Assembly: GCF_031769215.1 (NCBI RefSeq)
Contig: NW_026782173.1
Location: 1,736,001-1,800,000 of the forward strand
Source of the DNA: Ylistrum balloti
Lineage: Eukaryota
Direction of reading: 5' to 3'
Length of the DNA stretch: 64,000 nt
Part shown: piece after piece, positions 3,586 to 52,366 of the stretch
Numbering within the stretch: the first letter of the stretch is position 1
Layout: each line of letters opens with the position of its first letter
Notes under the pieces: generated by a model
Databases searched by the model: none
The model's input: only the letters and a program-made list of their open reading frames with translations
What the model was told of the DNA's origin: nothing
Position numbers and translations under genes: made by a program

Positions 3586-3599
3586 AATTCAGAATAGCC

Positions 3600-11117: not shown

Positions 11118-14100
11118 ATGGTGTCTATTAATGTCCATTTCATTGTTCTTCACGGTATAATCATATTGATATCAAACGTGCAATCAAGGAACGTGCTCCT
11201 TATACTTGGTAAGGTGTTAAGTGCAACAAATATTTCAAAAAATAATGTTCTAATGTGTGATGTTCAGTAAAAGTTTGACGTCAGCTTTCAGTTTCACTTT
11301 GTCTTTTCCTACATTCATTGTTCATGTTATGTTATATTTCAAACGAAGCGTAATTAGATTTCAAACATAAATGTAGATACAAACGCGATTGTTGTTATAT
11401 TCAGAAGTATGTGCTTGATAATGTTTAGGGGATGATGCGGGATTTGAGACACAGGTGTACAACAATCATATTTGTAAAACACCAAATCTGAACAAGTTAG
11501 CTGAGAGGAGCTTGGTCTTCAACAACGCATTTACATCAGTGAGCAGTTGTTCACCTAGCAGGTATAAACATTTACATATAGAACACTATGCAGTGTATTA
11601 AAATTATCAGCTGGAGTGTCGAGCCTTGAATTCTGGGTTGGTATCGTAGATAAGTAATTTAAGTCATTTGTAAATATTGAATAAAAAATTTCAATCTTAG
11701 TTTTCTTTTTCTGTTATGGTTGTTACAGTGAAAGATCTAATTATCTTGTTTTCAGTTAATTCTATGGATTGGCAATTGTTAAGTATTTAGTTTTTCACTA
11801 TTGAATAAGTTCTTATTGGTTATTGAAAAGGAAACGAAAAATAAACGAACATAAATAGGGATGCTGAAATACCGGATAAGCGGTAATAACTTTAATTTTG
11901 TTCATTTTATTTTTGTGGAATTTCCTAGTACATGTACAGTAAAAAAATTTTGAAAAACAGATGAAGTATATGCTAAGGTTACAGTTGAAGTCCATTCATT
12001 ATTTTGTGAAAGAGATCATAGCGATGACAGGTAGCTTAGATTTTATTAAAAATATGGAAAAAAGGCATACAGATAAGAATAACACCAGCCATAGTTAAAC
12101 ATCCTGATATACATGTAGAATAGGAGAATGTGAAACTAGTTAGTAATTCCAATATTTTCATAATGATCAGGAATATCCAACACATGGTTCATTAACTACA
12201 TATAATAAACACTAAATAAGACAAAACAATCTTGTCCTATAAAACATTATAAAAAAGGACTAGTGTCTTATGTTCACAGGTCAGTCGTGTTGTCAGGATT
12301 ACCTCAGCACCAGAATGGAATGTATGGACTGTTCAATGGATACCACCACTTTCAGTCATTTGATGAAGTCAAAAGCTTGCCACTACTTCTGAAGGGGGCA
12401 GGTATCAGAACAGGTACGACAGAGGACAGGTATCAGTATAGGTTAATCAGAGTACATTTGACACTACAGGTAAATTAGGGGACAGGTGTCAGTATAGAAG
12501 GATAAGGTTAACACATCAGTACAGGTTAACCAGAAGACAGATGTCAGTGCAGGTACATAAGGAGACAGGTGTCAGTACAGTTAAATCAGGAGAGAGTTGT
12601 CAGTACAGGTTAATCAGGAGATAGTGCAAGTGCAGGTTAATCAGAAGACAGATGTCAGTTTTAATCAAAAGACAGGTGTTAGTGCAGGTACATCAGGAGA
12701 TAAGCATCATTACAGATTAATCAGGTAACAGGTGTCAGTGCAAGAAAATAAGGTGAAGACATAAGCACAATTTAATCAGGAGACAGGTATCAGAACAGTT
12801 AACCCAGGAGACAGGTGTCAGTACAGGGTAATCAGGAGACAGGTATCATTTAAAGTAAGACAGTTTGTACCAGTTAATAGGGAGACAGTTGTAATTGGAG
12901 ACAAGTTTCAGTACAGATAATCAGAAAACTATTGGCAATACAGGTAAATCATGTGACAGATATCAGAATAGATAAATCAGCAGACAGGTGTTAGAATAGT
13001 TAATCAGAAAAAAGGTGTCAACGCTGTGGTGTTAGTATTAGGGAGACAGAAGACCAGTATCATGGGGGCCACTGACACTGGTATGTTAAGTTGTAGGATA
13101 TTTTTACCATGACATGTTATTTTGTTTTGACCTGACAGGTATAATTGGTAAGAAGAATGTGGGTCCAGAGTCAGTATACCCATTTGATTACTCTGTGACG
13201 GAACTTGATGGCCATAGTATTCTACAAACAGGACGGAATATCACTTTCATTCGTCAACATGTTCGAGAATTTCTACAACACAATTCATCCAGGTGAGTGT
13301 TTCTTTATATCACAAAGAAAATTCTTCAGAAATTAAAAGAACTTTTTCACTGCCTAATATCTTTTGTGTATTAACTTATTATTTCTTGTGTGTATATACT
13401 TTGTAATGTATACCTCTCTTCATGGTAGGTACTATTTTCATCTTATTCTCATTTTTCTTTTTTTTTGCCAAAATTTTGGTGAAATCTTGAAAAACCTTAA
13501 ACTTTATAGAGTAAACATAATGAGATAGTGACATACCCCACTCACTAAGTCAGTTCCATCCCCAGTTCCACTCACTTAACTCAGTTCCATCCCCAGTTCC
13601 ACTCACTTAACTCAGTTCCATCCCCAGTTCCACTCACTAAGTCAGTTCCATCCCAAGTTCCACTCACTTAACTCAGTTCCATCCCCAGTTCCACTCACTA
13701 AGTCAGTTCCATCCCCAGTTCCACTCACTAAGTCAGTTCCATCCCCAGTTTCACTCACTAAGTCAGTTCCATCCCCAGTTTCACTCACTAAGTCAGTTCC
13801 ATCCCCAGTTCCACTCACTAACTCAGTTCCATCCCCAGTTTCACTCACTAAGTCAGTTCCATCCCCAGTTTCACTCACTAACTCAGTTCCATCCCCAGTT
13901 TCACTCACTAAGTCAGTTCCATCCCCAGTTTCACTCACTAAGTCAGTTTCATCCCCAGTTCCACTCACTTAGTCAGTTTCATCCCCAGTTTCACTCACTA
14001 AGTCAGCTCCATCCCCTGTTACATCCATTACTGGGTATGTCAGTTCCATCCCTGTGCCTTACCCACCAATTCTATTTAATCCTTTAACTCTACCCATCAA

Positions 14101-17100
14101 GGATTTCTCTCTCTCTCTTACTATGTCACTTCCATTCCCCTGTCTTAACCACCAAGGAAGATCCATCCTAAAACCCTACCCACAAAGTAAGTTCCAACCC
14201 CTATCACTATCACTCAGGTCAGTCCATTCCCCCAGCCTTACCCACTAAGTTAGTCCATCCCTACATCCACCCACCAAGTCTGTTTCATCTACCAGCTCTA
14301 TCCACTAACTTGGTTCTGTCCTCCCACAAAGTCAGTGCCATCCCCTACCTCCACCCACCAAGTCTGTTTCATCCACCAGCTCCAGCCTCCAAGTTGTTTC
14401 CATCCAATAAGCCCACCTACAAAGCAACATTTAACTGTAACGTCTAAACAAGGTATATATATTGTCTTCAGTTTCCTTATCTTTCCTCTATTATTGTCCC
14501 TTTGTGACAGAGGTAGAAGTGTATATTTACCCTTACACAAAAATGCATGAAACATCAATACATACATCTGTATTACAATACAACAAACTCCTTTATCAGC
14601 ACTCTAGCAACTTTGTCATTTAATGGATTTTAAGAGAATTTACATGCAGATTTGGTATGAAAATATTTTGTGTAAATTTGATTTTGCAGAGTCAAGGATG
14701 TCATTCTTACTTTTAGAAATCATATATTTCAGCACTTCCGTAATTTGAATTTTCATTTGATTTTAGTGACCTAATACCTCCAGTATATTAATCAGTCTCT
14801 TTTTTGTTAGCTGTCAATTTTTATGAAGGCAGATGGATTTATATCATTTGCCGTGTCTTCTTTTCTTATCAGATAAAAAAAAATTACTGATTTGAAATAT
14901 ATTCCAGTCCCTTTTTCCTGTACGTGGCATTCCATGACCCCCACCGATGTGGCCACACTCATCCCCAGTATGGACAGTTCTGTGAGAAGTTTGGAGCTGA
15001 TGGAAGCATGCCTGATTGGAAGCCCATAACTTTTGATCCTGCATCTGTTGTTGTCCCATATTTTGTTCAGGACACACCTGCTGCCAGACTGGACATTGCT
15101 GCTCAATACACCACCATAAACCGCATGGACCAAGGTAAACTATTCTGATGGATTCTACAATTGAAGTATCAAAACATGTAATGTATTGGTGTAGTCTCTT
15201 ATATAACACAGATCAACATGTACTGGTGCAGTATAATGTATGGCCCCATGTATATAACACAGATCAACATGTACTGGTGCAGTATAATGTATGGCCCCAT
15301 GTATATAACACAGATCAACATGTACTGGTGCAGTATAATGTATGGCCCCATGTATATAACACCGATCAACATGTACTGGTACAGTATAATGTATGGTCCC
15401 ATGTATATAACACAGATCAACATGTACTGGTACTGTATAATGTATGGCCCCATGTATATAACACAGATCAACATGTACTGGTGCAGTATAATGTATGGTC
15501 CCATGTATATAACACAGATCAACATGTACTGGCACAGTATAATGTATGGTCCCATGTATATAACACAGATCAACATGTACTGGTGCAGTATAATGTATGG
15601 TCACATGTATATAACACAGATCAACATGTACTGGTACAGTATAATGTATGGTCACATGTATATAACACAGATCAACATGTACTGGTACAGTATAATGTAT
15701 GGTCCCATGTATATAACACAGATCAACATGTACTGGTACAGTATAATGTATGGTCCCATGTATATAACACAGATCAACATGTACTGGTGCAGTATAATGT
15801 ATGGTCCCATGTATATAACACAGATCAACATGTACTGGTACAGTATAATGTATGGTCCCATGTATATAACACAGATCAACATGTACTGGTACAGTATAAT
15901 GTATGGCCCCATGTATATAACACAGATCAACATGTACTGGTGCAGTATAATGTATGGCCCCATGTATATAACACCGATCAACATGTACTGGTACAGTATA
16001 ATGTATGGTCCCATGTATATAACACAGATCAACATGTACTGGTACTGTATAATGTATGGCCCCATGTATATAACACAGATCAACATGTACTGGTGCAGTA
16101 TAATGTATGGTCCCATGTATATAACACAGATCAACATGTACTGGCACAGTATAATGTATGGTCCCATGTATATAACACAGATCAACATGTACTGGTGCAG
16201 TATAATGTATGGTCACATGTATATAACACAGATCAACATGTACTGGTACAGTATAATGTATGGTCCCATGTATATAACACAGATCAACATGTACTGGCAC
16301 AGTATAATGTATGGTCCCATGTATATAACACAGATCAACATGTACTGGTGCAGTATAATGTATGGTCACATGTATATAACACAGATCAACATGTACTGGT
16401 ACAGTATAATGTATGGTCACATGTATATAACACAGATCAACATGTACTGGTACAGTATAATGTATGGTCCCATGTATATAACACAGATCAACATGTACTG
16501 GTACAGTATAATGTATGGCCCCATGTATATAACACAGATCAACATGCACTGGCACAGTATAATGTATGGTCCCATGTATATAACACAGATCAACATGTAC
16601 TGGTACAGTATAATGTATGGTCCCATGTATATAACACAGATCAACATGTACTGGTACAGTATAATGTATGGTCCCATGTATATAACACAGATCAACATGT
16701 ACTGGTACAGTATAATGTATGGCCCCATGTATATAACACAGATCAACATGTACTGGTACAGTATAATGTATGGCCCCCATGTATATAACACAGATCAACA
16801 TGTACTGGTACAGTATAATGTATGGTCACATGTATATAACACAGATCAACATGTACTGGTGCAGTATAATGTATGGTCCCATGTATATAACACAGATCAA
16901 CATGTACTGGTACAGTATAATGTATGGTCCCATGTATATAACACAGATCAACATGTACTGGTACAGTATAATGTATGGTCCCATGTATATAACACAGATC
17001 AACATGTACTGGTGCAGTATAATGTATGGTCCCATGTATATAACACAGATCAACATGTACTGGTACAGTATAATGTATGGTCCCATGTATATAACACAGA

Positions 17101-19763
17101 TCAACATGTACTGGTGCAGTATAATGTATGGTCCCATGTATATAACACAGATCAACATGTACTGGTACAGTATAATGTATGGTCACATGTATATAACACA
17201 GATCAACATGTACTGGTACAGTATAATGTATGGTCCCATGTATATAACACAGATCAACATGTACTGGTACAGTATAATGTATGGTCACATGTATATAACA
17301 CAGATCAACATGTACTGGTACAGTATAATGTATGGTCACATGTATATAACACAGATCAACATGTACTGGTACAGTATAATGTATGGTCCCATGTATATAA
17401 CACAGATCAACATGTACTGGTACAGTATAATGTATGGTCCCATGTATATAACACAGATCAACATGTACTGGTGCAGTATAATGTATGGTCCCATGTATAT
17501 AACACAGATCAACATGTACTGGTACAGTATAATGTATGGTCACATGTATATAACACAGATCAACATGTACTGGTACAGTATAATGTATGGTCCCATGTAT
17601 ATAACACAGATCAACATGTACTGGTGCAGTATAATGTATGGTCCCATGTATATAACACAGATCAACATGTACTGGTGCAGTATAATGTATGGTCCCATGT
17701 ATATAACACAGATCAACATGTACTGGTACAGTATAATGTATGGTCACATGTATATAACACAGATCAACATGTACTGGTACAGTATAATGTATGGTCCCAT
17801 GTATATAACACAGATCAACATGTACTGGTACAGTATAATGTATGGTCCCATGTATATAACACAGATCAACATGTACTGGTACAGTATAATGTATGGTCCC
17901 ATGTATATAACACAGATCAACATGTACTGGTACAGTATAATGTATGGTCCCATGTATATAACACAGATCAACATGTACTGGTACAGTATAATGTATGGTC
18001 CCATGTATATAACACAGATCAACATGTACTGGTACAGTATAATGTATGGTCACATGTATATCAGATATACTTTAACAAAGTACAAACAAAAGTTAAGCTA
18101 TATTTGTCGTAGAGAAAGACATAGAGATTACAAGCCATGTAGACAAATCTTTAGAGTGTAAGTAGTTGTCCTCCAAACATAAACATCATTCAATGTACTA
18201 TTTCTTTACCTCAAGGTATAGGCCTTATACTGAAGGAACTAGAATTGGCAGGCCATGCAGATGACACTCTAATCATGTACTCCTCCGACAATGGCATACC
18301 TTTTCCAAATGGCCGCACCAACTTGTACGACTCTGGTATGGCAGAACCATTCTTCTTGTCATCACCACATCATAGGAAGCGCTGGAACCAGGTGCGTGCA
18401 TAACTACATATCTCTCCTACTCAAGGTTTCATTATTTTGATTCTGTTTTCCTATTTGATATTTGGACCAGGATTATCAGGTAGTTACAGTCGGTAGAGTG
18501 TTTCTTCCTTTTCCACAAGTCATAAGTTTGGTCAAAAAATAATTTTTACCAAACAAGTCAAGCCTCACTAACAAGAAATTATTATATTTGGTTTATAATT
18601 TCATGTGATAATTTCATATTAAAATAGAATTTTAGAAAGAAAAAATCTGCAAAACTCTTTTTCTCAGAACTTCATTGTATCAAGGCTAGTCACTGCTGAA
18701 CTAAAATACATTGATGACAAGTTTTGTAAATCACATATAGAATGTAATATGTTCCTATACTGGACAATGTATGGGGACAGGTATGTCTTACAATCAAGAC
18801 TTTACATGATTGTTTGTGCAATTAACTCATTTTATGAGGCTGACTTGAATTATAACATATCATCATTTAGATCCAATCTGTTATCAGTTGTGACATGCTG
18901 TTAAGGTTTTTATACAGAGTTAAAATAATGGGAAAATACTGAACTATCAGCCAACACAGCACATGCAGCTCTGCTTAGTGTTCATACAATTAATATAATG
19001 GCTATTTGGACACTGATAAGATAAAAGATAATAAGATTCCTTCTCAATTTTACAACATTGCTGCTCCAGTATATTGAAATTACTGAAATGAACATCCAAG
19101 AACAGATTTTGTTTTAAGAATTTGCTTTGAATTCACATGAAATAATTTTTGTAATTTTAGAAAAGTGACGCCATGTTGAGCCATGTGGATATCCTGCCTA
19201 CAGTACTTGATTGGTTTGGTGTCAAATTCCCTCACTACAAAATCCTCAGAAACCATGTGACCTTGACTGGCAAATCTTTACTCCCATTGCTTGAGGTAGA
19301 ACCGAAGGAATCCTGGGATACTGTATACGCCAGTCACAGCCTCCATGAGGTCACCATGTATTACCCAATGAGGGTGGTGAGGAACAAACAGTATAAGCTC
19401 ATTCAGAATATCAACTTTCAAATGCCATTTTCAATAGATCAGGATTTTTATATTTCAAGGACATTCCAAGATTTGCTGAATAGAACACATAAGGGAGAGG
19501 ACACACATTGGTACAAAACTCTCCACAAATACTACTACAGGGACCAATGGGAACTCTTTGATATCATTAATGACCCACAGGAACTTCAAAACCTAGCTCA
19601 TGATTCTAGTCATTCAAAGGTTTATCATCAATTGCAACACCAATTGAATATGTGGCAGAATATAACCTTTGACCCCTGGATTTGTTCACCCTCTGGTGTT
19701 CTACAGGACGCTGGACCACACAAGTACCATCCACAGTGCTACAGTATGTACAATGGACTATGA
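11118..19763 (+). CDS. SGSH: N-sulfoglucosamine sulfohydrolase (sulfamidase), 505 aa, 7 coding exons
   Basis: Exons 11118-11208, 11429-11561, 12280-12413, 13139-13292, 14908-15134, 18216-18391, 19161-19763; all GT-AG, phases consistent, total 1518 nt. Hydrophobic N-terminus, ILGDDAG, sulfatase [56 protein letters not shown], all collinear with human SGSH as recalled. Confidence 0.96.
12414..13060 (+). repeat. Degenerate ~28-bp tandem repeat starting at the SGSH exon 3 donor
   Basis: Unit ~GTTAATCAGGAGACAGGTGTCAGTACAG; resembles the exon end GGGGCAGGTATCAGAACAG|GT. Confidence 0.8.
13540..14060. repeat. 30-bp minisatellite in SGSH intron 4 (decays to ~14420)
   Basis: Unit CTCACTAAGTCAGTTCCATCCCCAGTTCCA, ~17 copies. 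Confidence 0.95.
15185..18060. repeat. 51-bp minisatellite (~56 copies) filling SGSH intron 5
   Basis: Unit ACAGATCAACATGTACTGGTACAGTATAATGTATGGTCCCATGTATATAAC; 612-bp (12-unit) higher-order duplication; 1-nt insertion at ~16776. Confidence 0.97.
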
Positions 19764-23403: not shown

Positions 23404-26400
23404 TCAGTGAGCTGGTACTTTGTTGACATAATTCATGATAGCATTTTGTAACACTTGAGCTCGTTGGCTTTCTTCCTCTCGTATACCGTTGAGTTCTGCC
23501 TCCCTTGATTTTAACCTTCTTTTCAAATCCTCAGTCTCCAAGTCCTTTTCTTCCAGAAGTTGTCTGTGTCTGAGAAGTTGTTCTGGAAGTAAATATTGAA
23601 TTTTTAGACACATGATCTGGTAATGCCTTGACTGAAGTATAGAATGCAGTGATATACCAGTAAAGCTGAAGGAAACAGCCTCAACATAGCTCTGATAATC
23701 TACAAAGTACATAATTATACAGAACAACTAACGTCCTTATAATTTGAGAAGTTTAATTAAAAGAGGATAACCAGTTTGAAATTGGCTGGTCTATAAATAT
23801 TAGTCTGTAGTTTGTGATCTTTAGTGTACATCTATACTGACAGGACCGTACCTGTATATATTACATGTCTATATTGCTGGTGGTGTGAGATTTAATCAGC
23901 CCCTATACACTTACCTGACATCTTTCTGTCAGCTTCCCCCAGTTGCTCCCTGAGTTCGGCCTGGATTTTCCTCTCCCCATCAAGCTTAGTGAGTGTTTGA
24001 TTCAAGTCTATCTTTACCTTACCCACTTCAGACAGTGTTGTCGTGTTCTTTTCAGATAACTCCTGTGGATTGGTGAACAAAGCCATTTTTATTTTTATTC
24101 ATTTCATGAAATTTATCCATTCCAATATTTTTCTGTCCTAGCCAATATGATGGTTTCATAACGATCCATGAAGAATTAGAAAGACATTAGCTTATAGAGA
24201 CAAAACATATGATGTTACAGAATGCCTCTATCTCTGGTTATAATAAAGCATCTGAACATATGAAGTGTCCCAAAATATCTAAATCTATTTGGAATAATGG
24301 GTATTGTCTGTGTTAATCCATTTAAATGCCTTTAACAGTAGTAGTCTATAAAACTAAATTTAAGAAAGGTAGTATTCAGGCCACAGAGTCACTTTTATCT
24401 TGTATTGTGATACTGTGTATCACTCACCTGCTGAAGCTCTTCCACCCGCCTTTTCATCAGTTCAAGCTCCATGGTGAGCGAGCTGTTTTTGGACTGTAGT
24501 TCCGATGCTTGGCCTGACATCTGGTTACACCGTGATTGGAGCTCATCTTTAAGGTGCATCTCCAGCTTCAGCTTTTCCTCCATATGTTGTTGACGAAGAT
24601 CCTTCAATTAGAGTCAGTCAATAAACTGTTTTAGTTAATAATGAGTTACCTCCCTTCCCACCCAAAAAAGAACATGATTACCCCCGCCCCTTACTCTCAA
24701 AACAATGTACAACTATATTATTTCTCTAGGATATAAAAAAAGGCCTCAAGTAAATTGGATGTTAATCTGTCATACCTCCTCACTTAGGAGTTTCTGTTTA
24801 GCGAGACTGAGCTGTTCCTCATGGTGAAGTTTGTTGTTCATATTTGCGTTTTTGTGTTTACTGATCTCCTCCTCTAAGGCCAGTCTTGTCATCTCCAGCT
24901 TCTGAATCCTTTCACGCAGGGCACTCTCTGTTTCCTCAGCCTCTTGTCGTACTCTTGCCACCTGTACAAGGAGACATGATCAATGTTACCTTCCACATTT
25001 GTTATTTACAGTGCACCCGACCACTAACAAACCTTAAACGTTACAAATTCATAAAAATAGTTTCAATTTAAATAATTACCAACAATTCTAAGTTGACAAG
25101 ATAAAATTTGTCCATGGATCCTTAAGACATAAAATTAAATCAATCTCTGCCCTGCCCACTACAACTGGATTTTTCAGGAGATCTACCTGCTCACAGCCCT
25201 GATATCCCTTTTTAGTTAGTTAGTTACAGGTTTTATGTGTCCGTGATCCCTCCCGTTTCTGGATATCATCTAAGTGATGAACGTCAGTGTTCTTGCAATA
25301 TGAACCACAGTACCCCAAGTCGAGCTCTACAGAATTTCAACAACACAGTCTGGCTAATACACATTGATAGTTTACCTCTTTTTGTCTGATCTGCTCTGCA
25401 TCTCTTAAATCATCCTTATGTCGTATCCGTTCTTGTTGTAGACGCTCTGCAAACATTGAAAGACGTTTATCATTTTGATTTCTATACAATACAAAGATGT
25501 TTATAATCATCAAAGAAATGTGAGTTCTTTTCTCTGAATCTCACACCTTCATGCCTCTGCTTACTTTTTTTTCTGTTGTCTATGTAAACAAACATGATCT
25601 GTGTCCCATGTAACTTATAAATGTGACCTTAACCTTTTTTTCTTTATTCATTGTGTCAAATTTTAAATGTTTACCATCAAAATGTGTTCCTTTCAGTTTC
25701 AATTCTGCTGTTAAGTGTGTAATTTGTTCCTTCAACTCAAATATTTGATCTTGCTGTAGCCGACATTTCCTTTCTGCATCCTCCAACTGAGAACAAATCA
25801 AGGGGAGATCATTTATAGAAAGATATCACTCTCTGGACACAAAGGGCAAATCATTATACAAAGATATCGCTATCTGGACACTTCAGTTCACAAAAAATAT
25901 CACTCCCTGGACACCAAGGGCAAATCATTATACAAAGATATCACTCCCTGGACACTTCAGTTCACAAAAAATATCACTCCCTGGACATCAAGGACAAATC
26001 ATTGTACAAAGATATCACTCCCTGGACACCAAGGGCAAATCATTATACAAAGATATCACTCCCTGGACATCAAGGGCAAATCATTGTACAAAGATATCAC
26101 TCCCTGGACACCAAGGGCAAATCATTATACAAAGATATCACTCCCTGGACACCAAGGGCAAATCATTATACAAAGATATCACTCCCTGGACACCAAGGGC
26201 AAATCATTATACAAAAGATATCACTCCCTGGACACCAAGGGCAAATCATTATACAAAGATATCACTCCCTGGACACAAAGGGCAAATCATTATACAAAGA
26301 TATCACTCCCTGGACACCAAGGGCAAATCATTATACAAAGATATCGCTATCTGGACACCAAGGGTAAACCATTATACAAAGATATCACTCCCTGGACACC

Positions 26401-32400: not shown

Positions 32401-35400
32401 TGTCGTGTTCCTACCTGTAATGACTTGTCGTGTTCCTACCTGTAATGACTTGTCATGTTCCATTTGTTTCATATGCTTGGACATCATTGTGATCTTTTTA
32501 CTGTATTCTCCTGTTACTAAAGCACGGTCCTCGTTCTGACTTATGGCTGTTTCTACAACACAATACACTTGAAATGAACAAATGAAAATGCATTCATTTT
32601 GAGCTCAACAATTAAACAAATATTGTGAGTGAGGTTGGAGTGGGCAAATAAAGTTAACCTGGCAATGGCAGCATCAAATTTTAAAATATTTCAAAAGTTT
32701 TTGAGCAAATTCCTCAAGCTGTAATGGATCACCACCATCGAGCTGTTAGTTATAGAATTGTCTATTCATATTTTCTATATTAATGAGCCCAAAATGGACC
32801 AACTTTACATTGTTCAGCAAATGTTAAATTAAATTTCATTACATATCACAGAGTTGCTCTGATGAAATGTATAATTTATAACTTAAAAGTTTTCTTAACC
32901 TGAAGATTCAAGTTCTTTTTTTTAAAAAGACAGAAAATGCTATTATTTAACCAGACACCTGTAGAAACATTTTTGTGATTTTGTGATTGATAACTAATAA
33001 ATCTTTCATTTAATTTTCTCATCTAAGAAAAAGTGCCTTTCCCTATATTATATATATTTGTTGTTTTTTGTGTTGATATCTATTATTATAGAAAACTGAA
33101 AACAATTTCTTATGTAATATAGTCCAGAATTTAACCTGTTTAACCATTTGTCTACATCTTGAGTGTAATGGCTTACCAATAGACTTTAAGATATCTACAG
33201 GGATGTTGTTGCCAGCTAGCTCCATTCTACACAGGGTTTTATTAGTTTGTAACATTTCTAGTAAAGCACGGCCTCCCAACAGCCCAACATTGTTCCATCG
33301 TAAGTCTGAAAAAATTAACTTGTACTTATAAATAAAGGTATAGAAACACGTTTGGATTGTTCATCCTATTCGAAAGAGCTGGTATTGTAATATTTTGCTT
33401 TTTGAAATAAAACTACTTTTTACTAAAACTGAATAATTTTAAAGAAAACCAAACAATCTTGTAATTTACATACAAATGTACTTTATACATCTATGGAAGA
33501 TATACTGATAAATAGTGAGATATAAAATTGTTTGATTATATACTATTGAAATAAACAATAATCTTATACACTAAATATATCAATTTCTGAGTAAATGTAA
33601 AACAAATTACAAACTGAACGGTAAGTACCAACTAATATTGTCCTTACCCAGAGATCTTAGCGTGCTGTTCCTCTTGAGCCCTGCAGCAAGCTCTATGGCT
33701 CCGTCATGATTGATCTGGTTGTTCCTGATGTCTAGAGCCTGGAGACTATCATTGGAACCTACTCCCTCACAAAACAGAGCAAAGGAGTTGTCCAGCATCC
33801 CCAAGGCATTCCATTCCAGACACAAGCTGTGTACAAAAATAATTGGACTAGTTTGACAATCCACCAGAAATAAGTAACAATACTGTATATCATTTCCACT
33901 AAACACTTAAGTTTTAAACTGTCTTACCAGTACCCAAAATATTTGTAAATACGAAAATGAAAGTCCTTGTTACCATCAGTTTTTTAAACAAATGATCCAG
34001 CATCACCATGTACCTTTTCTTGTTCTAAAATGTTTTGACAGTAATATTTAACTACAAAGTTATCATCATTAGTCTCTATCTTATATTGAGAAAAATAAAC
34101 TATTCTACTCAGTAAAGATGTAAGCTTTGTAGTATACCTAAGGAGGGTGTGGTTGTGACGCAGCATCTTTCCAAGGAAGTCCACACCTGTTCCACGGATG
34201 TTGTTTCCCTAGAAGATAAAAGTATTTACTAGTTGGATGTTCTCTTTGATACTTTTTCAAATCTCAATTTTATGAATTAATTAGTTTACTGAAATAAATA
34301 TTTCTGGATAACTGGGTATGCAAAATGAGATAATAAAATCACAATGGCAGATGGTATAAATGAAACCACAACACAGTATCTCTTTATACATTAGCAAAAA
34401 GGAACATTTGTGCTGATAACCAACTACTTTATCTATAGCATGTTTATATATCTTAGAATGAATAAGATCGTTTCTCAAAATTCCTGTCAGTTTTTAATTC
34501 ATTAATTAAAACACAAGAATGACCCTTTTGTGTCCATGCTTCTCCATTATCAGGATTAAGTAAAAATTTAAGTGGAGAGAAATTCAGCTAAACAGAAATT
34601 TTAAACTTTAAAACGGCTCAATTAATTAACAAAGTCAAAATAAATTTAAAGTGAATTTCTTAATTTTAATATGTGTTGGAGAAGTTATATACTGATATAA
34701 GTATCTATTATTCCATGTTTTGTTGACAGCGTTCAAGGTTTTCCATAATAGCCGGTCGCCAGTCAATTTGACCGGTTACTTTGATCATTTGGCCACCTAC
34801 ACCAATCCAGTTCCGTAATAATGTTCCGTACACGACTACATGTACACGGCAGGCCAGCCTCCTACTTTCACTACACAGCCTACTACTAACAAAATTATGG
34901 AAAACCCTGAGCATTTGTACTTAAGAGAGAAACTGAACTAACTGCAAAACTTATACAAACAACTTTATCAACAAGTGACATAATTTATTCATGATTTCAC
35001 AAAGTAATATCACAGGAGTTTCATACAATACTGATGTCATGACTATTACATGGCACAACTTACTTATGTGATAAAATCCTTTCTTTAGTCTCAGTCCTGG
35101 TAAGTACATATATAAATAAAAATCTCACCTTCATGTCAAGTTTTTTACAGTAGTTGTTTGTGGAAAATCCATAAGCTAATCCTTTTACACCTGTAAATTA
35201 AGATGATATCACATAAAACACTACTTCAATTGGTACTATATTACCTTGGTATTTCAAAATTTTCAATTTATTTTCAACATAACATTTGATGGTATTTTAT
35301 CAATATATGAGTATAATGTTTCATACCATCTTCACTAAGCATACAATCAGCAAACTTGATTTCTCTGAAATTTTTGTCTGTGGCAATTGTTTTCCCAAGG

Positions 35401-42167: not shown

Positions 42168-43024
42168 TTCACTGTTTTATTATTATACAATTGTACTTGG
42201 AAAGAATGTTCCGTAGAATGATGCATTATAAAACGAGTCTCATTAGTTTTTCTTTGACAAGTCATGTCCTTGGGACGGATTTCATAAAGTCTCGTTTAAT
42301 TTACAACAGTTACATTATGACTTACACGTTTTAAAGTAAAAATGTGGAAGACAAAATCTAAAGGAGGCAGCCATTCTGTTGCGTCGTTTTCAACTCGTGA
42401 CGTTATGTCGTTGTCCATGTTATAAACATCATTATCTTTTTCTGACTTATGTAACACAGGAAAAGCACTCTAGGGCACATTACTCAAGTAACATACGCAA
42501 AAATATTACATGTGTGCATCCACCAGATTATGTGATTGAAAGGAGCTGGCTGGCCGTCATGATATAAGACGCGTGGTGTGATGTTTGCCTGTAAAGCTCG
42601 GCCAGTTATAACGACCGTAAATTCCACAACAAGACAGTTTCTTGCTTACACATTCCCTACGCATGTTGCTATCATTTACCGACACTAATTTGATTTTAAC
42701 TTAAGAAAAAACTGCTAATGTTATCCGTCAAGTAGAAATGCCCATTTGACGGTGAGCCGTCACCGCTGCCGAGTCAATAATGATGATGCTGTTATGGTCA
42801 TGTGATTTTTTTATCGTACTGTACATCACATCTCTTTCTGGTTAGATGAGCAAAAACATGGCCGGGAATAGATCGTTGTGATCAAGCATTTCAGAACATC
42901 TTTTCTGAAATCACTTAAGAGTATTTATTGCTACATACCAAAAGTCCACGCGAATGGGTCCGTACGGCATCATGGTAACCACAGTAACGGACTAAAATTA
43001 TGAGCTATTAATAGACAAGACGTT

Positions 43025-46000
43025 ATGGCGACGGAGGTAGAGAGGAAGGCAGCAGCAGAAGTTGCCGAAGTTGCTAGACGTCTACAAGAAGCAAAGGAAA
43101 GTTGTATTCTAGGTAAGATTTACATCTGTAATACACGCCATTTTAACAGCCAGTATTCTCTAGAATATGATTTATTTGTACATAATGCAATTGTGTATTA
43201 CAAAACCTTTGATAAGTTATAAGTGTAGATATATATATAGAAACAGATAAGATACACGTGCTGTGCATACACCGACAACCAGCACACACGTACTTATCTG
43301 TTGTAGTCGACTGACTGATGTTAATGCGTTAGTCTAAGTGTATAAGCACAGTATTAAACAAGTACTTAAATGTGACAAGTAGAAATCATAATAGGTAATT
43401 ATCTTTATGAGAATTGACAAATGTAACTATATCAAACCCTTGTAAGAGATTTCTGTGTAACCGGACACTACTCGAAAGTAGTATTTTTTATGCTATAATA
43501 CATTACCAATATATACTCTGATCAGCACGGAGAGTGTTCCAGTGTTGGCTACCACACCTGCCAAAACCCCTCAATTCTTTTAAAATGCTCTCGATATATA
43601 CAAACACATGCCTCTTATCTTAAGGCACACGAATGCTAAATGCATGTGTTGTTCAGTTATGGAAAATTACTAATATTACGTTAATGGATATTAAAGTGAC
43701 ATTTTCGGTAACCTCACATATATAAGATAACTATTCTTCTATATACTACATGTATGTATCAGATTATATAGACATAGCAAGATGTGTTTATGAAACAGTA
43801 CTGTGCCTCGGTTACAACAAAAATCTGAAATTGGACATTAAAATTGTATTGTGTAAGGCATGTGCTAATTGCATGCACGTTTTGTGAAACACTTATGTCC
43901 TCATTGTGGTAATGGTTGCTTGTTCCATTTTGGTACCATCAGAAAGGTCTTGTCAAAGGAAACACACATACCTAATATGAAAGCCCTACCTCCTTAAATA
44001 CGATAGTTATGGCCAAAGTCAAAATTTGTCAAATGTAGGTTAAAGGTCACGGTCAAGGTCACATGGTGAACAATTTGGGTACCAGCGGAAAGGTCTTTTA
44101 CAAGGAGTACACATGCCAATTATGAAAGCCTTACCTCTTACAGTGCAAAAGTTATGGGCAAGATTAAAGTTTACAACACACAAAGAGAGAGCACAAAAAC
44201 AATATGCCCCGACCCTTCGACCCGTGGGCATTAAAAGCATTATTAATAGACAAATAAATGTGTTTATTATAGATAAATCAACAAACTGATAAATTCGTGA
44301 GAAATGTTATCACTCCCCAAACCTAATACCATTGTAGACCTCTCTGACTGTGGTCCGTAGTGGATGTTCCTGACGTAAATATCTGCCATTGTAGACTGAC
44401 TGTGGTCTGTAGTGGATGTTTCTGATGTAGCTATCTACCATTGTAGACCTCTCTGACTGTGGTCTGTAGTGGATGTTCCTGGCATAGCTATCTACCATTG
44501 TAGACTAACTGTGGTCTGTAGTGGATCTTCCTGACATAGCTATCTACCATTGTAGACCTATATGACTGTGGTCTGTAGTGGATGTTTCTGACATAGCTAT
44601 CTACCATTGTAGACCTCTCTGACTGGTCTGTAGCGGATGTTTCTTATATACCTATCTACCATTGTAGACCTCTCTGACTGTGGTCTGTAGCGGATGTTTC
44701 TGATGTAGCTATCTACCATTGTAGACCTCTCTGACTGTGGTCTGTAGTGGATGTTCCTGACATAGCTGTCTACCATTGTAGAACTCTCTGACTGTGGTCT
44801 ATAGCGGATGTTTCTGATGTAGCTATCTGCCATTGTAGACCTCTCTGACTGTGGTCTGGTTCTGTAGCGGATGTTCCTGACGTAGCTATCTACCACTGTA
44901 GACCTCTCTGACTGTGGTCTGGTTCTGTAGCGGATGTTCCTGACGTAGCTATCTGCCATTGTAGACCTCTCTGACTGTGGTCTGGTCTGTAGCGGATGTT
45001 CCTGACATAGCTATCTACCATTGTAGACCTCTCTGACTGGTCTGTCGCGGATGTTTCTTATATAGCTATCTACCATTGTAGACCTCTCTGACTGTGGTCT
45101 GTAGTGGATGTTCCTGACATAGCTGTCTACCATTGTAGAACTCTCTGACTGTGGTCTGTAGCGGATGTTTCTGATGTAGCTATCTACCATTGTAGACCTC
45201 TCTGACTGGTCTGTAGTGGATGTTCCTGACGTAGCTATCTACCATTGTAGACCTGTCTGACTGTGGTCTGTAGCGGATGTTTCTGATGTAGCTATCTACC
45301 ATTGTAGACCTCTCTGACTGTGGTCTGTAGTGGATGTTCCTGACATAGCTGTCTACCATTGTAGACCTCTCTGACTGTGGTCTGTAGTGGATGTTTCTGA
45401 CATAGCTATCTACCATTGTAGACCTCTCTGACTGTGGTCTGTAGCGGATGTTCCTGACGTAGCTATCTACCATTGTAGACCTCTCTGACTGTGGTCTGTA
45501 GTGGATGTTTCTTATATAGCTATCTACCATTGTAGACCTCTCTGACTGGTATGTAGCGGATGTTCCTGACATAGCTATCTACCATTGTAGACCTCTCTGA
45601 CTGTGGTCTGTAGCGGATGTTTCTGATGTAGCTATCTACCATTGTAGACCTCTCTGACTGGTCTGTAGTGGATGTTCCTGACATAGCTATCTACCATTGT
45701 AGACCTCTCTGACTTTGGTCTGTAGCGGATGTTTCTGATGTAGCTATCTGCCATTGTAGACCTCTCTGACTGTGGTCTGGTCTGTAGCGGATGTTCCTGA
45801 CGTAGCTATCTACCACTGTAGACCTCTCTGACTGTGGTCTGTAGTGTATCTTCCTGACATAGCTATCTACCATTGTAGACCTCTCTGACTGGTATGTAGT
45901 GGATGTATCTGACATATAGCTATCTTCCATTGTAGACCTCTCTGACTGGTCTGTAGTGGATGTTCCTGACATATATCTATCTACCATTGTAGAACTCTGT

Positions 46001-49000
46001 GACTGTGGTCTGTAGCGGATATTTCTGACATAGCTATCTACCATTGCAGACCTCTATAACTGTGGTCTGTAACGGATGTTTCTTATGTAGCTATCTACCA
46101 TTGTAGACCTCTCTGACTGTGGTCTGTAGTGGATGTTTCTGACATAGCTTTCTACCATTGTAGACCTCTCTGACTGATCTGTAGTGGATGTTTCTGATGT
46201 AGCTATCTACCATTGTAGACCTCTCTGACTGGTCTATAGTGGATGTTTCTTATGTAGCTATCTACCATTGTAGACCTCTCTGACTGTGGTCTGTAGTGGA
46301 TGTTTCTGACGTAGCTCTCTACCATTGTAGACCTGTCTGACTGGTCTGTAGTCTATGTTTCTGACGTAGCTATCTACCATTGTAGACCTCTCTGACTGTG
46401 GTCTGTAGCGGATGTTTTCTGACATAGCTATCTACCATTGTAGACCTCTCTGACTGTGGTCTGTAGCGGATGTTCCTGACGTAGCTATCTACCATTGTAG
46501 ACCTCTCTGACTGTGGTCTGTAGTGGATGTTCCTGACGTAGCTATCTACCATTGTAGACCTCTCTGACTGTGGTCTGTAGTGGATGTTCCTGACGTAGCT
46601 ATCTACCATTGTAGACCTCTCTGACTGTGGTCTGTAGTGGATGTTCCTGACGTAGCTATCTACCATTGTAGACCTCTCTGACTGTGGTCTGTAGCGGATG
46701 TTTCTGATGTAGCTATCTACCATTGTAGACCTCTCTGACTGTGGTCTGTAGTGGATGTTTCTGACGTAGCTATCTACCATTGTAGACCTCTCTGACTGGT
46801 CTGTAGCGGATGTAGACCTCTCTGACTGTGGTCTGTAGCGGATGTTTCTGATGTAGCTATCTGCCATTGTAGACCTCTCTGACTGTGGTCTGTAGCGGAT
46901 GTTTCTGATGTAGCTATCTACCATTGTAGACCTCTCTGACTGTGGTCTGTAGCGGATGTTTCTGATGTAGCTATCTACCATTGTAGACCTCTCTGACTGG
47001 TATGTAGCGGATGTTCCAGACATAGCTATCTACCTTTGTAGATCTCTCTGACTGTGGTCTGTAGCGGATGTTTCTGATGTAGCTATCTGCCATTGTAGAC
47101 CTCTCTGACTTGTATGTAGCGGATGTTCCTGACATAGCTATCTACCATTGTAGACCTCTCTGACTGTGGTCTGTAGCGGATGTTTCTGATGTAGCTATCT
47201 ACCATTGTAGACCTCTCTGACTGGTCTGTATTGGATGTTCCTGACATAGCTATCTACCACTGTAGACCTCTCTGACTGTGGTCTGTAGCGGATGTTTCTG
47301 ACATAGCTATCTACCATTGTAGACCTCTCTGACTGTGGTCTGTAGCGGATGTTTCTGATGTAGCTATCTACCATTGTAGACCTCTCTGACTGTGGTCTGT
47401 AGTGGATGTTCCTGACATAGCTATCTACCATTGTAGACTGACTGTGGTCTGTAGTGTATCTTCCTGACATAGCTATCTACCATTGTAGACCTCTCTGACT
47501 GTGGTCTGTAACGGATGTTCCTGACGTAGCTATCTACCATTGTAGACCTCTCTGACTGTGGTCTGTAGTGGATGTTTCTGACATAGCTAGCTACCATTGT
47601 AGACCTCTCTGACTGTGGTCTGTAGCGGATGTTTCTGATGTAGCTATCTGCCATTGTAGACCTCTCTGACTGTGGTCTGTAGTGGATGTTTCTGACGTAG
47701 CTCTCTACCATTGTAGACCTCTCTGGCTGTGGTCTGATGAAGATACCTGATGCCATTTATATGGTTTTGAGAGGAACAACTATAAGGACAAGCAACTTAT
47801 CACGGAATCAGTTACAGAAAGTTCCACCAAAGTTACCGGCCAACTTCAAGCTGCTTCAAGGTATATCTTTATAACATTATATATGTATGGAGCAAGTTAA
47901 CAACTCCATGGTAAACTCACATACTGTTGCGTTAGTGTACAGTGTGTCTGTCAACAGCTTCAAGATATATCCTTATAACATCACACATATATACAACATG
48001 ACAACTGCTCCAATGTATATCCTTATAACATCACACACATATACAGCGTGTCATCTGTTCCAATGTTTATCCTTATAACATCACAAACATATACAGCGTG
48101 TCAGCTGTTCAAAGATATATCCTTATAACATCACACACATATACAGCGTGTCAACTGTTCCAAGATATATCCTTATAACATCACACACACATACAGCGTG
48201 TCAACTGTTCCAAGATATATCCTTATAACATCACACACATATACAGCGTGTCAACTGTTCCAAGATATATCCTTATAACATCACACACATATACAGCGTG
48301 TCAACTGTTCCAATGTATATCCTTATAACATCACACACATATACAGCGTGTCAACTGTTCCAAGATATATCCTTATAAAATCACAAACATATACAGCGTG
48401 TCAACTGTTCCGATGTATATCCTTATAACATCACACACATATACAGCGTGTCACCTGTTCCAATGTATATCCTTATAACATCACACACATATACAGCGTG
48501 TCAACTGTTCCAAGATATATCCTTATAACATCACACACATATACAGCGTGTCAACTGTTGCAATGTATATCCTTATAACATCACACACATATACAGCGTG
48601 TCAAGTGTTCCAAGATATATCCCTATAACATCACACACATATACAGCGTGTCAACTGTTCCAAGATATATTCTTATAACATCACACACATATACAGCGTG
48701 TCAATTGTTCCAATGTATATCCTTATAACATCACACACATATACAGCGTGTCAACTGTTCCAAGATATATTCTTATAACATCACACACATATACAGCGTG
48801 TCAACTGTTCCAAGAAATATCCTTATAACATCACACACATATACAGCGTGTCAACTGTTCCAAGATATATCCTTATAACATCACACACATATACAGCGTG
48901 TCAACTGTTCCAAGATATATCCTTATAACATCACACACATATACAGCGTGTCAACTGTTCCAATGTATATCCTTATAACATCACACACATATACAGCGTG

Positions 49001-50572
49001 TCAACTGTTCCAATGTATATCCTTATAACATCACACACATATACAGCGTGTCAACTGTTCCAAGAATATCATTATAACATCACACACATATAAAGCGTGA
49101 CAACTGTTCCAAGATATATCCTTATAACATCACACACATATACAGCGTGTCAACTGTTCCAAGATATATCCTTATAACATCACACACATATACAGCGTGT
49201 CAACTGTTGCAATGTATATCCTTATAACATCACACACATGTACAGCGTGACAACTGTTCCAAGATATCCTTATAAAAACACACACATATACAGCGTGACA
49301 ACTGCACCTTGATATGTCCTTATAATATCACACACATATACAGCGTGACAACTGCACCTTGATATATCCTTATAACATCACACACATATACAGCGTGATA
49401 ACTGTTCCAAGATGTATCCTTATAACATCACACACCTATACAGCGTGTCAACTGTTCCAATGTTTAACCCCATATCACGGAGGTATAAATTACACACTGG
49501 TACAACAAATATTACAGAACAACTTGTCTACTACTTGTTTTGTGGAAATAACTAAAGTAATATGACTTGGTTAATGTCGTATACAATTGAGAGGCTCCGA
49601 GACTTCAATAATTTAAATTTTTATATTGATATCGGTTCTTCATGACTACATTTGAACGTAAATAGAAAGACTTTCGTTTGTTCATCACACATCTTGCACT
49701 TGCTTTTACTGTATTTACAAGTAGGCAGAATTTAGCAGTTTAAATATGTTTTGGATAAGTGTATTGCCGTAATTTTAAAACTCCAGAAAGGTATGCAAGT
49801 TTCTAGACTGAGATGTTTATATATATGTTGTTCTGGAGATGTATACTTTTTACACTGTGCACAACTTGTAACATATTCACCATAGTATATCATGCAATTT
49901 GTTTCAGAACTTAATCTGAGTCAAAACTTCCTATCTGAGTTACCAGGAGAAATGAGTTTGATGTCGGAACTGACTGCTTTGGACTTGTCAATGAATCGTC
50001 TCCGTGAAATACCACCAGTAATCTATCAGTTCGGTAACCTACAGGTGTTGAGGATAACCAGGAATGCAATTGTTGGTAATGTCAAATTTCCAACTCTTTG
50101 ATGTTGATTTGTTACTAATAAAGTAAAAAACAAAACACCCACGTACTTTAAATAACACATATACTCAGGTAATATCTTAAACCTTTGTTATTTACACTTA
50201 AATATTTTATTCTTTTATCATGTATTATCTTGAATCAGAGTCACAAACAATTATTAATATTATGTTTTTTGTAAATTTATTTTATTTTTATTTAGCAAAT
50301 AAATGTATTTTTTATGAAGTGATTCTGATGTTCTTGAGGATCCGATCTCTTTACCGATATCTGAAAAAGACTTTTATTTAAGAGAAGCAAATTTATTTCT
50401 ATTTCTTTCTTCAGAAATTGATATGGATAGGCTAAGTCAGATGTCCTCTCTACAGGAAGTGGATCTTCGCGGTAATCCTCTGTCACCGGAAGTAAAGAGC
50501 AATCTTCTCGAGAGAAGATTTCGTGTGCTCATTGATGACGTCGAAGAGGAAGAAAGTATGAGTGTGGATTAA
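43025..50572 (+). CDS. LRRC20: LRRC20-like leucine-rich repeat protein, paralogue b, 185 aa, 4 exons
   Basis: Exons 43025-43112, 47717-47860, 49908-50075, 50415-50572 (558 nt). Same intron positions and internal exon sizes (144, 168 nt) as paralogue a; EVAEVARRLQEAKES..DLSGCGLMKIPDAIY..ELNLSQNFLSELPGEM..LQEVDLRGNPL. Confidence 0.88.
43777..44236 (+). mobile_element. Non-autonomous Helentron/HINE-like element
   Basis: Starts CAAGATGTGTTTATGAAACA; two ~146-bp subunits (GGTACC...GAAAGGTCTT...ATATGAAAGCC at 43932 and 44078); ends AAAAACAATATGCCCC...GGGCATTAAAA with a subterminal hairpin (TGCCC 44205 / GGGCA 44226). Family from recall of bivalve repeats. Confidence 0.65.
44325..47740 (+). repeat. 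57-bp minisatellite (~60 copies) made of the LRRC20b exon 2 acceptor plus exon start
   Basis: Unit CTATCTACCATTGTAG|ACCTCTCTGACTGTGGTCTGTAGTGGATGTTTCTGACATAG; the last copy is the true acceptor (47716|47717). Confidence 0.97.
47945..49465 (+). repeat. 50-bp minisatellite (~30 copies) derived from the LRRC20b exon 2 donor junction
   Basis: Unit TCAACTGTTCCAAGATATATCCTTATAACATCACACACATATACAGCGTG versus junction CAAGCTGCTTCAAG|GTATATCTTTATAACATTATATATGTATG. Confidence 0.95.

Positions 50573-52327: not shown

Positions 52328-52366
<39 letters not shown>

What the first reader, a model, noticed from the sequence alone, without database searches (positions are those of the whole stretch)
12395..49465. 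Recurrent splice-junction-seeded minisatellites in three unrelated genes
Seen: five intronic arrays have units that are copies of the neighbouring exon-intron junction: SGSH exon 3 donor (28 bp, old and degenerate), LRRC45 exon 12 acceptor (41 bp), LRRC45 exon 7 donor (25 bp), and LRRC20b exon 2 acceptor (57 bp) and donor (50 bp). In each case the functional site is the terminal copy or next to it. Inference: either tandem amplification in this genome starts preferentially at splice junctions, or arrays that include exon edges survive only when they expand intron-ward and are then edited by selection on splicing. Either way, each array is a copy-number-variable bank of decoy or alternative splice sites that could tune isoform or NMD output. 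I do not recall this described as a genome-level class, but could not search.
Basis: partly seen in the sequence, partly recalled or inferred. Interest (0 to 1): 0.88.

Follow-up and report, generated by a model that had tools for sequence, protein, structure and literature searches.

The report
Splice-junction minisatellites ("mirages") in a scallop
In this scallop (Ylistrum balloti) four intronic minisatellites are tandem copies of the neighbouring exon-intron boundary, a kind of repeat already named "mirage" in amphioxus but, as far as I could find, not yet reported in molluscs.

Summary
The window is Ylistrum balloti (saucer scallop). It carries SGSH, LRRC45 and two LRRC20 paralogs. About 37% of it is tandem arrays.

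Four of the five claimed arrays are true copies of the adjacent junction. These are the SGSH exon 3 donor (28 bp), LRRC45 exon 7 donor (25 bp, about 39 copies), LRRC20b exon 2 acceptor (57 bp, about 60 copies) and LRRC20b exon 2 donor (50 bp, about 30 copies). The fifth, the 41-bp array beside LRRC45 exon 12, only abuts the acceptor (12-13 nt away). It shows no similarity across the junction (P=0.70).

The kind is known. Tandem repeats spanning exon-intron boundaries were named "mirages" in amphioxus (Adh3, globins, PGBD5), and human F7 intron 7 is a studied case.

New here:
- The SGSH exon 3 array is present in all four scallop genera examined.
- The LRRC45 exon 7 array is shared with Mizuhopecten.
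- Independent junction arrays sit at other exons in Mizuhopecten, Argopecten and the clam Mercenaria.

Seven of 14 independent minisatellite events span a junction, against 6-26% expected in these short-intron genes. That is suggestive, but not significant once the window's own four cases are set aside.

A regulatory "decoy bank" role is untested. Other first readers of this scan noted the same pattern in at least eight other windows of this genome.

The parts
12280..12413 (+). SGSH exon 3. The donor GT is at 12414-12415 (...GGGGCAGGTATCAGAACAG|gtacga).
   Evidence: Splice solver. PDB 4mhx alignment ends at AGIRTG. Clean 505-aa ORF.
12399..13018 (+). 28-bp degenerate minisatellite (unit CAGGTGTCAGTACAGGTAAATCAGAAGA). 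Its first copy is the last 15 nt of exon 3 plus 13 nt of intron. About 24 further donor-like GT sites lie in intron 3 beside the real donor.
   Evidence: TRF. Junction alignment score 35, spanning -15 to +38. Degenerate copies reach 12994. Donor scan. Homologous arrays in three other scallops.
32440..32552 (-). LRRC45 exon 7 (...GAACATGACAAGTCATTACAG|gtagga). The donor GT is at 32439-32438.
   Evidence: Ortholog tblastn, solver, and an exact match to the RefSeq protein.
31476..32461 (-). 25-bp minisatellite of about 39 copies. Each unit is the last 21 nt of exon 7 plus GTAG. There are 26 exact CAGGTAGGA donors (the real one included) and 6 CAGGTATAA. In-frame donors lie at +75, +375 and further on.
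   Evidence: TRF, alignment score 58, donor PWM scan. The same array is in Mizuhopecten; Pecten and Argopecten have a single copy.
47717..47860 (+). LRRC20b exon 2. The acceptor AG is at 47715-47716 and the donor GT at 47861-47862.
   Evidence: Same acceptor position as the paralog LRRC20a. Solver. 185-aa ORF, matching the product length of the public annotation.
44327..47736 (+). 57-bp minisatellite of about 60 copies. Each unit is about 19 nt of intron end (..taccattgtag) plus at least 20 nt of exon 2 start (ACCTCTCTGACTGTGGTCTG). There are 50 homologous acceptor copies including the real one; each of the 49 decoys runs into an in-frame stop within 26 codons.
   Evidence: TRF, alignment score 56 spanning -40 to +20, acceptor scan. 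Absent from Argopecten LRRC20b, where intron 1 is about 361 bp.
47846..49460 (+). 50-bp minisatellite of about 30 copies. Copy 0 is the junction itself (15 nt of exon plus gtatatctttataac...). Copy 1 is degenerate and has a GT at +50. Core copies carry AAGATAT or AATGTAT in place of AAGGTAT.
   Evidence: TRF core 47949-49460. Flank copies 47846-47948. Alignment score 23.5. Phased copies and donor scan.
25675..25786 (-). LRRC45 exon 12 (acceptor ...gatttgttctcag|TTGGAG).
25799..27377 (-). 41-bp minisatellite of about 40 copies in intron 11. It ends 12-13 nt upstream of exon 12 and is not a demonstrable junction copy. A homologous 43-bp x3.5 array lies in Pecten intron 11.
   Evidence: TRF, negative junction test, Pecten sequence.
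13538..14020 (+). Control: interior 30-bp array in SGSH intron 4.
   Evidence: A homolog is present in Mizuhopecten.
15200..18061 (+). Control: 51-bp array filling SGSH intron 5. It lies 66 nt from the donor and 154 nt from the acceptor and shows no junction similarity.
   Evidence: (score 8, background fraction 0.31).
28203..30735 (-). Control: 28-bp array in LRRC45 intron 9. Degenerate copies reach 40 nt from the exon 9 donor. Junction similarity is not significant.
   Evidence: (score 9, background fraction 0.17).

Best explanation
These are mirage-type minisatellites.

Origin (inferred). A short tandem duplication of 25-57 bp happened to straddle an exon-intron boundary. It was then amplified by the usual minisatellite processes, replication slippage and unequal exchange. 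The genome makes 20-60-bp arrays at a very high rate, and the array-free introns are short (roughly 100-1200 bp).

Why the arrays look intronic (logical consequence). Only the copy contiguous with the rest of the exon can give the normal mRNA. That copy is the first one for donors and the last one for acceptors. All other copies therefore lie in the intron and inflate it 3- to 13-fold.

Persistence (shown). Arrays persist and turn over for long periods. One is present in four scallop genera. Another is shared by two genera and is single-copy in two others.

Function (inferred). The extra splice sites are most likely silent passengers. This rests on the annotation, on the unchanged proteins of species without the arrays, and on published amphioxus and human F7 experiments. 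Occasional cryptic splicing cannot be excluded.
For: - Units cross the boundary at four junctions with scores far above all 772 background pairs.
- The junction copy is in register with the array, and identity to the consensus is 76-100%.
- The gene models equal the public annotation.
- The single-copy state of the same junctions exists in relatives: LRRC45 exon 7 in Pecten and Argopecten, exon 13 in three scallops, and LRRC20b exon 2 in Argopecten.
- Orthologous or independent junction arrays occur in separately assembled genomes: Mizuhopecten exon 7, SGSH exon 3 and SGSH exon 2; Argopecten exon 13 and SGSH exon 3; Pecten SGSH exon 3; Mercenaria exon 15.
- Exon structure and protein length are identical in all four scallops, with or without the arrays.
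- Published precedent: amphioxus mirages do not disturb splicing (PMC3087553, PMC3902484). In F7 intron 7 the most upstream of identical donors is chosen and the downstream pseudo-sites stay silent (PMC1557585).
Against: - No RNA data were available, so the silence of the decoys is inferred, not shown.
- The share of arrays that span junctions (7 of 14 events) is above the 6-26% expected from random seeding. A purely random-seed model may therefore be incomplete.
- Both junctions of LRRC20b exon 2 carry arrays, which is unlikely for two independent random events.
- The LRRC20b donor array has lost AG|GT in every core copy in two different ways (AGAT and ATGT). That hints at selection against decoys at that site.
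- I found no excess microhomology at the ends of the founding units.
Confidence: 0.78

Rival explanations
1. Exon-intron junctions are preferred birth sites for minisatellites in scallop genomes. Under this view there is a mutational hotspot at the boundary, for example from chromatin, methylation or replication-transcription features, or the conserved junction copy repeatedly re-seeds the array.
For: - 4 arrays span a junction in the window against 0.8-1.1 expected (P=0.005-0.014).
- 7 of 14 independent events span one across five bivalves (P from 1e-3 to 4e-2 depending on the null).
- Two arrays flank a single exon.
- Pecten SGSH intron 3 has a young layer at the junction (96-98% identity, containing exact exon sequence) and an older 28-bp layer behind it. 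That fits repeated re-seeding.
- Other first readers flagged the pattern in at least eight other windows (unchecked).
Against: - The window was chosen because of the pattern.
- Without its four cases, 3 of 7-10 events give P=0.06-0.3.
- The chance share is already high because introns are short.
- There is no microhomology signal.
- No junction arrays occur in LRRC45 of oyster, Pinctada, Mytilus or amphioxus.
Confidence: 0.3
2. The arrays are selected, copy-number-variable banks of decoy or alternative splice sites that tune isoform or NMD output.
For: - There are dozens of intact decoy donors as strong as the real one.
- An in-frame option exists at +75 nt in LRRC45.
- All 49 decoy acceptors in LRRC20b lead to stops.
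- Copy number differs between species: 39 versus 18 copies at exon 7.
- The SGSH exon 3 array is retained in four genera.
Against: - Arrays are absent at the same junctions in sister species with unchanged proteins.
- An in-frame stop in a 57-nt unit is expected by chance in about 60% of frames (my estimate).
- Decoy integrity differs from array to array, with no common pattern.
- Published cases show such pseudo-sites are silent.
- I had no expression data.
Confidence: 0.1
3. The junction similarity is chance, or an artefact of assembly in repeat-rich DNA.
For: One of the five arrays (exon 12 acceptor) does fall to chance. Tandem repeats are known to be hard to assemble.
Against: - Four alignments exceed all 772 background pairs.
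- The same arrays occur at the same junctions in independent assemblies of other genera.
Confidence: 0.02

Closest known systems
[quoted passage not shown] 2002, NAR 30:2871, not held in the library; globins: Ebner et al. 2010, PMC3087553; PGBD5: Pavelitz et al. 2013, PMC3902484)
   Same: The unit contains an exon end plus the adjoining intron with its splice signal. Both donor and acceptor sides occur. The authentic section sits at the edge of the cluster. Copies within a cluster are homogenised. Repeat number varies. Gene products are normal.
   Different: - A different phylum (Mollusca, Pectinidae, plus one venerid clam).
- Far higher copy numbers (18-107, against 3-6 in the globins).
- Mostly shorter units (25-57 bp).
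- One array is retained across four genera.
- Both sides of one exon are affected.
- No sign of intron gain: exon structure is identical in four scallops.
Human F7 intron 7 37-bp VNTR, whose first element spans the exon 7-IVS7 boundary (Borensztajn et al. 2006, PMC1557585)
   Same: A donor-side array in which the authentic 5' splice site is the first of several identical sites. This matches the layout at LRRC45 exon 7, SGSH exon 3, Argopecten exon 13 and Mercenaria exon 15.
   Different: The F7 case is a single locus with few repeats. Its silent pseudo-sites were shown by experiment. Nothing comparable has been tested here.
Intron gain by tandem duplication across AG|GT proto-splice sites (Rogers model, as discussed in PMC3087553)
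   Same: Both involve a tandem duplication that contains splice signals.
   Different: No new intron or exon is created here. The copies stay inside a pre-existing intron.

Membership tests
[quoted passage not shown] | Head-to-tail tandem array of minisatellite-sized units | tested here: met
   TRF finds periods of 25, 28, 50 and 57 bp with 16-60 copies.
[quoted passage not shown] | The unit contains both an exonic part and the adjoining intronic part with the splice signal | tested here: met
   Met for four arrays, whose alignments cross the boundary by 15-22 nt of exon. Not met for the 41-bp array at LRRC45 exon 12.
[quoted passage not shown] | The authentic gene section lies at the edge of the cluster and the normal mRNA is made | tested here: inconclusive
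   The position at the edge is shown. The annotated RefSeq protein equals the model that uses the terminal sites. No transcript data could be examined.
[quoted passage not shown] | Length instability or copy-number variation | tested here: inconclusive
   Between species the answer is yes: the exon 7 array has 39 copies in Ylistrum, 18 in Mizuhopecten and 1 in Pecten and Argopecten. Variation within a species cannot be tested with these tools.
[quoted passage not shown] | Concerted evolution inside the cluster, with boundary copies less homogenised | tested here: inconclusive
   The LRRC20b donor array fits: copies 0 and 1 are 76% and 58% identical to the consensus, against 92% for interior copies. 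The LRRC45 exon 7 junction copy is 100% identical to the consensus.
Intron gain by tandem duplication (Rogers model) | A new intron is created between duplicated AG|GT sites | tested here: not met
   All 17 LRRC45 exons have the same boundaries in four scallops, with or without arrays.

The most novel reading that the evidence does not exclude
In pectinid genomes, exon-intron junctions are real hotspots for minisatellite birth. The conserved junction copy keeps re-seeding the array, so a 'conveyor' of splice-site copies can persist across genera (SGSH exon 3). Array length then modulates splicing efficiency or NMD of the host gene.
Probability: 0.2. Interest if true: 0.7.

Novelty: new member of a known kind. 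Interest (0 to 1): 0.5.

Why it matters
This extends mirage-type junction minisatellites from cephalochordates to molluscs. They can be large (up to 107 copies and 4.4 kb) and long-lived, and they drive much of the intron-size difference between related scallops. For example, LRRC20b introns are 361 and 332 bp in Argopecten against 4604 and 2047 bp in Ylistrum.

These arrays are natural experiments in splice-site choice. Tens of identical donors or acceptors sit in a row and only the terminal one is annotated as used.

They are also a practical hazard for gene prediction and read mapping in bivalve genomes.

Whether junctions are preferred seeding sites is now a sharply posed question that a genome-wide count can answer.

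Tried and rejected
1. LRRC45 exon 12 acceptor as a junction copy. Rejected in Ylistrum. The homologous Pecten 43-bp array shows a weak, non-significant resemblance to the exon start (score 9.5, background P=0.155). An ancient junction origin cannot be excluded.
2. Junction origin of the 51-bp (SGSH intron 5) and 28-bp (LRRC45 intron 9) arrays. The best alignments touch the junctions but sit within background.
3. A hidden gene or junction next to the 69-bp array at 40780-42165, whose minus strand carries CACG|GTGAGT. No ORF there has a Pfam hit and no flank copy was found.
4. Microhomology at the ends of the founding unit in single-copy outgroups. No excess over other junctions.
5. 'Exon drag', meaning extra substitutions in exon ends covered by arrays. 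Argopecten exon 13 has 3 unique changes in 23 nt (two amino-acid changes), but P=0.17. The others show nothing.
6. GC content of units as a predictor of junction origin. I saw no pattern by eye.
7. The single representative-library search with an LRR exon was swamped by giant LRR proteins. It still yielded one LRRC45 ortholog that opened the comparative route.
8. Canestro et al. 2002 could not be read because it is not held. No mollusc report of junction minisatellites turned up in the held library.
Full report
**What the window is.** TRF finds about 14 minisatellite arrays covering 37% of the 64 kb. GC content is about 34%. An LRR exon used as a query recovered an LRRC45 ortholog from the clam Mercenaria. 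That ortholog aligns to 17 exons on the minus strand.

With ORFs, splice consensus and frame rules I built models for four genes:
- SGSH (+ strand): 7 exons, 505 aa.
- LRRC45 (- strand): 17 exons, 668 aa.
- LRRC20a (+ strand): about 173 aa.
- LRRC20b (+ strand): 185 aa.

The LRRC45 model is 100% identical to RefSeq XP_060071452.1 of Ylistrum balloti. The public Y. balloti locus L007 is identical to the reverse complement of window 13404-45879. The product lengths called there (185, 173, 668 and 505 aa) match my models. A PDB alignment to human SGSH confirms the end of exon 3. The paralog LRRC20a fixes the exon 2 acceptor of LRRC20b.

**Checking the observation.** I aligned each of 56 junction windows (+/-40 nt) to each of 14 array consensus units, in gene orientation. 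Non-adjacent pairs give a background mean of 7.2 and a maximum of 13.5 (n=772). Four adjacent pairs stand far outside this, and each alignment crosses the boundary:

| Junction | Unit | Score | Span |
|---|---|---|---|
| SGSH exon 3 donor | 28 bp | 35 | -15 to +38 |
| LRRC45 exon 7 donor | 25 bp | 58 | -22 to +40 |
| LRRC20b exon 2 acceptor | 57 bp | 56 | -40 to +20 |
| LRRC20b exon 2 donor | 50 bp | 23.5 | -15 to +40 |

The fifth claimed case fails. The 41-bp array ends 12-13 nt upstream of LRRC45 exon 12. The segment -13 to +30 scores 6.0 against the unit, which is no better than shuffles (P=0.70) or other acceptors.

Three further intronic arrays are interior and show no junction similarity. 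These are the 30-bp array in SGSH intron 4, the 51-bp array in SGSH intron 5 and the 28-bp array in LRRC45 intron 9.

**Anatomy of the four confirmed arrays.**
- **LRRC45 exon 7 donor.** The unit is 21 nt of exon plus GTAG. There are 26 exact CAGGTAGGA donors (the real one included) and 6 CAGGTATAA. The real site is the first one. In-frame donors lie at +75 nt and beyond.
- **SGSH exon 3 donor.** The array is degenerate (66% matches). The first copy is 15 nt of exon plus 13 nt of intron. About 24 further donor-like sites lie in the intron, and some score as well as the real one.
- **LRRC20b exon 2 acceptor.** There are 50 homologous copies of ..CCATTGTAG|AC including the real one. The real site is the last. 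Every decoy meets an in-frame stop within 26 codons. By my estimate about 60% of frames in a 57-nt unit would contain a stop by chance.
- **LRRC20b exon 2 donor.** Copy 0 is the junction itself. Copy 1 is degenerate and has a GT at +50. Core copies carry AAGATAT or AATGTAT, so no core copy reaches a donor score of 4 bits. Each variant is one substitution away from AAGGTAT. That is a hint of selection against decoys at this one site.

Identity of the junction copy to the array consensus ranges from 76% to 100%.

The 'terminal copy is the functional one' observation is a logical necessity. For a duplicated (exon tail + intron head) segment only the first donor gives the normal mRNA. For (intron tail + exon head) only the last acceptor does.

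**Is it known?** Yes, as a kind. Ebner et al. [quoted passage not shown] They cite Canestro et al. [quoted passage not shown] Pavelitz et al. 2013 add PGBD5 and mention troponin C. In human F7 intron 7 a 37-bp VNTR has a first element that spans the exon 7 boundary. The most upstream of the identical donors is chosen and the pseudo-sites stay silent. I found no mollusc report in the held library. Canestro 2002 itself was not available.

**Comparative evidence.** I fetched the LRRC45-SGSH loci of Pecten maximus (L004), Mizuhopecten yessoensis (L005), Argopecten irradians (L006) and Mercenaria mercenaria (L001). All 17 LRRC45 exons map with AG/GT at identical CDS positions in the four scallops. 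In Pecten the first three exons could not be placed; the locus carries a 500-N assembly gap.

- **SGSH exon 3 donor.** A junction array is present in all four scallops.
  - Mizuhopecten has 27 bp x 28 copies, at least 14 of them carrying the intact GGTAAGAC donor.
  - Argopecten has a 26-bp array.
  - Pecten has two layers. A young array of 32/47/79-bp units (96-98% identity) reaches 21 nt into the exon. An older 28-bp array lies behind it.
- **LRRC45 exon 7 donor.** The 25-bp array is shared by Ylistrum (39 copies) and Mizuhopecten (18 copies). Pecten and Argopecten have the single-copy state ...TTACAG|gtaggaaa. In an LRRC45 protein tree Pecten and Argopecten form a clade (98/99 support). One gain or one loss is therefore enough.
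- **New, independent junction arrays.**
  - Mizuhopecten SGSH exon 2 acceptor: 33 bp x at least 5, made of 17 nt of exon plus 16 nt of intron with its AG.
  - Argopecten LRRC45 exon 13 donor: 41 bp x 107 copies, 4.4 kb, with 96 of 97 copies keeping GGTAAAAT.
  - Mercenaria LRRC45 exon 15 donor: 94 bp x 3.8, made of 78 nt of exon plus 16 nt of intron, with all donors intact.
- **LRRC20b in Argopecten.** There are no arrays, and introns 1 and 2 are about 361 and 332 bp, against 4604 and 2047 bp in Ylistrum.
- **Other taxa.** LRRC45 of Magallana, Pinctada, Mytilus and Branchiostoma has no junction array. Pinctada, Mytilus and Mercenaria carry mostly 124-167-bp satellites inside introns; Magallana and Branchiostoma have no arrays at all in this gene.

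**Is there an excess at junctions?** In the window, random seeding in the array-collapsed sequence, with exon-internal seeds rejected, predicts 0.8 spanning arrays for the whole window or 1.1 for the four gene spans. Four are observed (P=0.005 and 0.014).

Across the five bivalves I count 14 independent minisatellite events in these genes, and 7 of them span a junction. The chance share depends on unit length and intron compactness and runs from 6% to 26%. The pooled P therefore runs from 1e-3 to 4e-2. Leaving out the four window cases that prompted the finding gives P=0.06-0.3.

The window was selected for this pattern. Notes from other first readers report it in at least eight other windows of this genome (unchecked). 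The excess is therefore suggestive, at roughly 2-4 fold, but not established. A large part of the apparent surprise comes from how short the array-free introns are. Examples are about 90 bp for LRRC45 intron 11, about 190 bp for intron 7 and about 220 bp for SGSH intron 5.

**Mechanism.** Three things are shown. The arrays are tandem copies of junction segments. They are absent from the same junctions in relatives. They differ in copy number and in layer structure between genera.

Two things are inferred. The first is origin by a small tandem duplication followed by slippage or unequal exchange. The second is that internal splice sites are silent, which rests on the annotation, on the unchanged proteins of relatives, and on the amphioxus and F7 precedents.

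Two mechanistic ideas were tested and not supported: microhomology at the ends of founding units and accelerated change of exon ends under arrays.

**Verdict.** The kind is already known (mirages). This is a new member in a new phylum. The added facts are deep retention at one junction, very high copy numbers, and a testable question about junction preference.

Noticed in passing
window 11118-35879; L001, L004-L011: SGSH and LRRC45 are convergent neighbours in Ylistrum, Pecten, Mizuhopecten, Argopecten, Mercenaria, Magallana, Pinctada and Branchiostoma floridae. An LRRC20-like gene lies upstream of LRRC45 in three scallops (not seen in the Pecten locus, which has an assembly gap there) and in Mytilus. 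This looks like very old microsynteny.
   Followed up: partly
window 51650-55111 (-), array 52782-54318: A long open frame of 1154 codons is rich in acidic residues. It has a 39-bp (13-codon) coding tandem repeat of about 40 copies. A similar acidic repeat gene sits upstream of LRRC45 in Pecten (L004 7290-8902, 84-bp repeat).
   Followed up: no
window 38316-38582 (-): An ORF with an FADD motif (…IIFLFADDTIIYRDIK…) looks like a reverse-transcriptase fragment inside LRRC20a intron 1. Neighbouring minus-strand ORFs (37676-39026) may belong to the same retroelement remnant.
   Followed up: no
L005 about 31095-31150 (minus strand): Between the Mizuhopecten SGSH exon 2 acceptor array and the real acceptor lies an inverted copy of the exon 2 start (aaatccaggatcatcccc, the reverse complement of GGGGATGATCCTGGATTT). 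This junction has therefore been duplicated in both orientations.
   Followed up: no
L004 22623-23972: The Pecten SGSH intron 3 array has two layers. Young 32/47/79/252-bp higher-order units next to the exon are 96-98% identical. An older 28-bp array further in is 83% identical. It looks as if new copies are added at the junction end.
   Followed up: partly
window 777-4171 and 57959-61536: Four further arrays (42, 36, 21 and 32 bp; the 21-bp one has 126 copies) lie in sequence where I could not identify any gene. Whether they sit in introns of unannotated genes is unknown.
   Followed up: no
L001, L009, L010: Introns of Mercenaria, Pinctada and Mytilus LRRC45 and SGSH carry 124-167-bp satellite arrays (most 145-167 bp) that look related across loci and are probably linked to transposable elements. 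They are never at junctions, unlike the 20-60-bp scallop minisatellites.
   Followed up: no
L006 16826-16848 (Argopecten LRRC45 exon 13 end): The 23 exon nucleotides covered by the 107-copy array carry three Argopecten-specific changes, giving two amino-acid changes (EQI to DQL) in an otherwise conserved stretch. The exon copy equals the array consensus. This is not significant on its own (P=0.17).
   Followed up: yes
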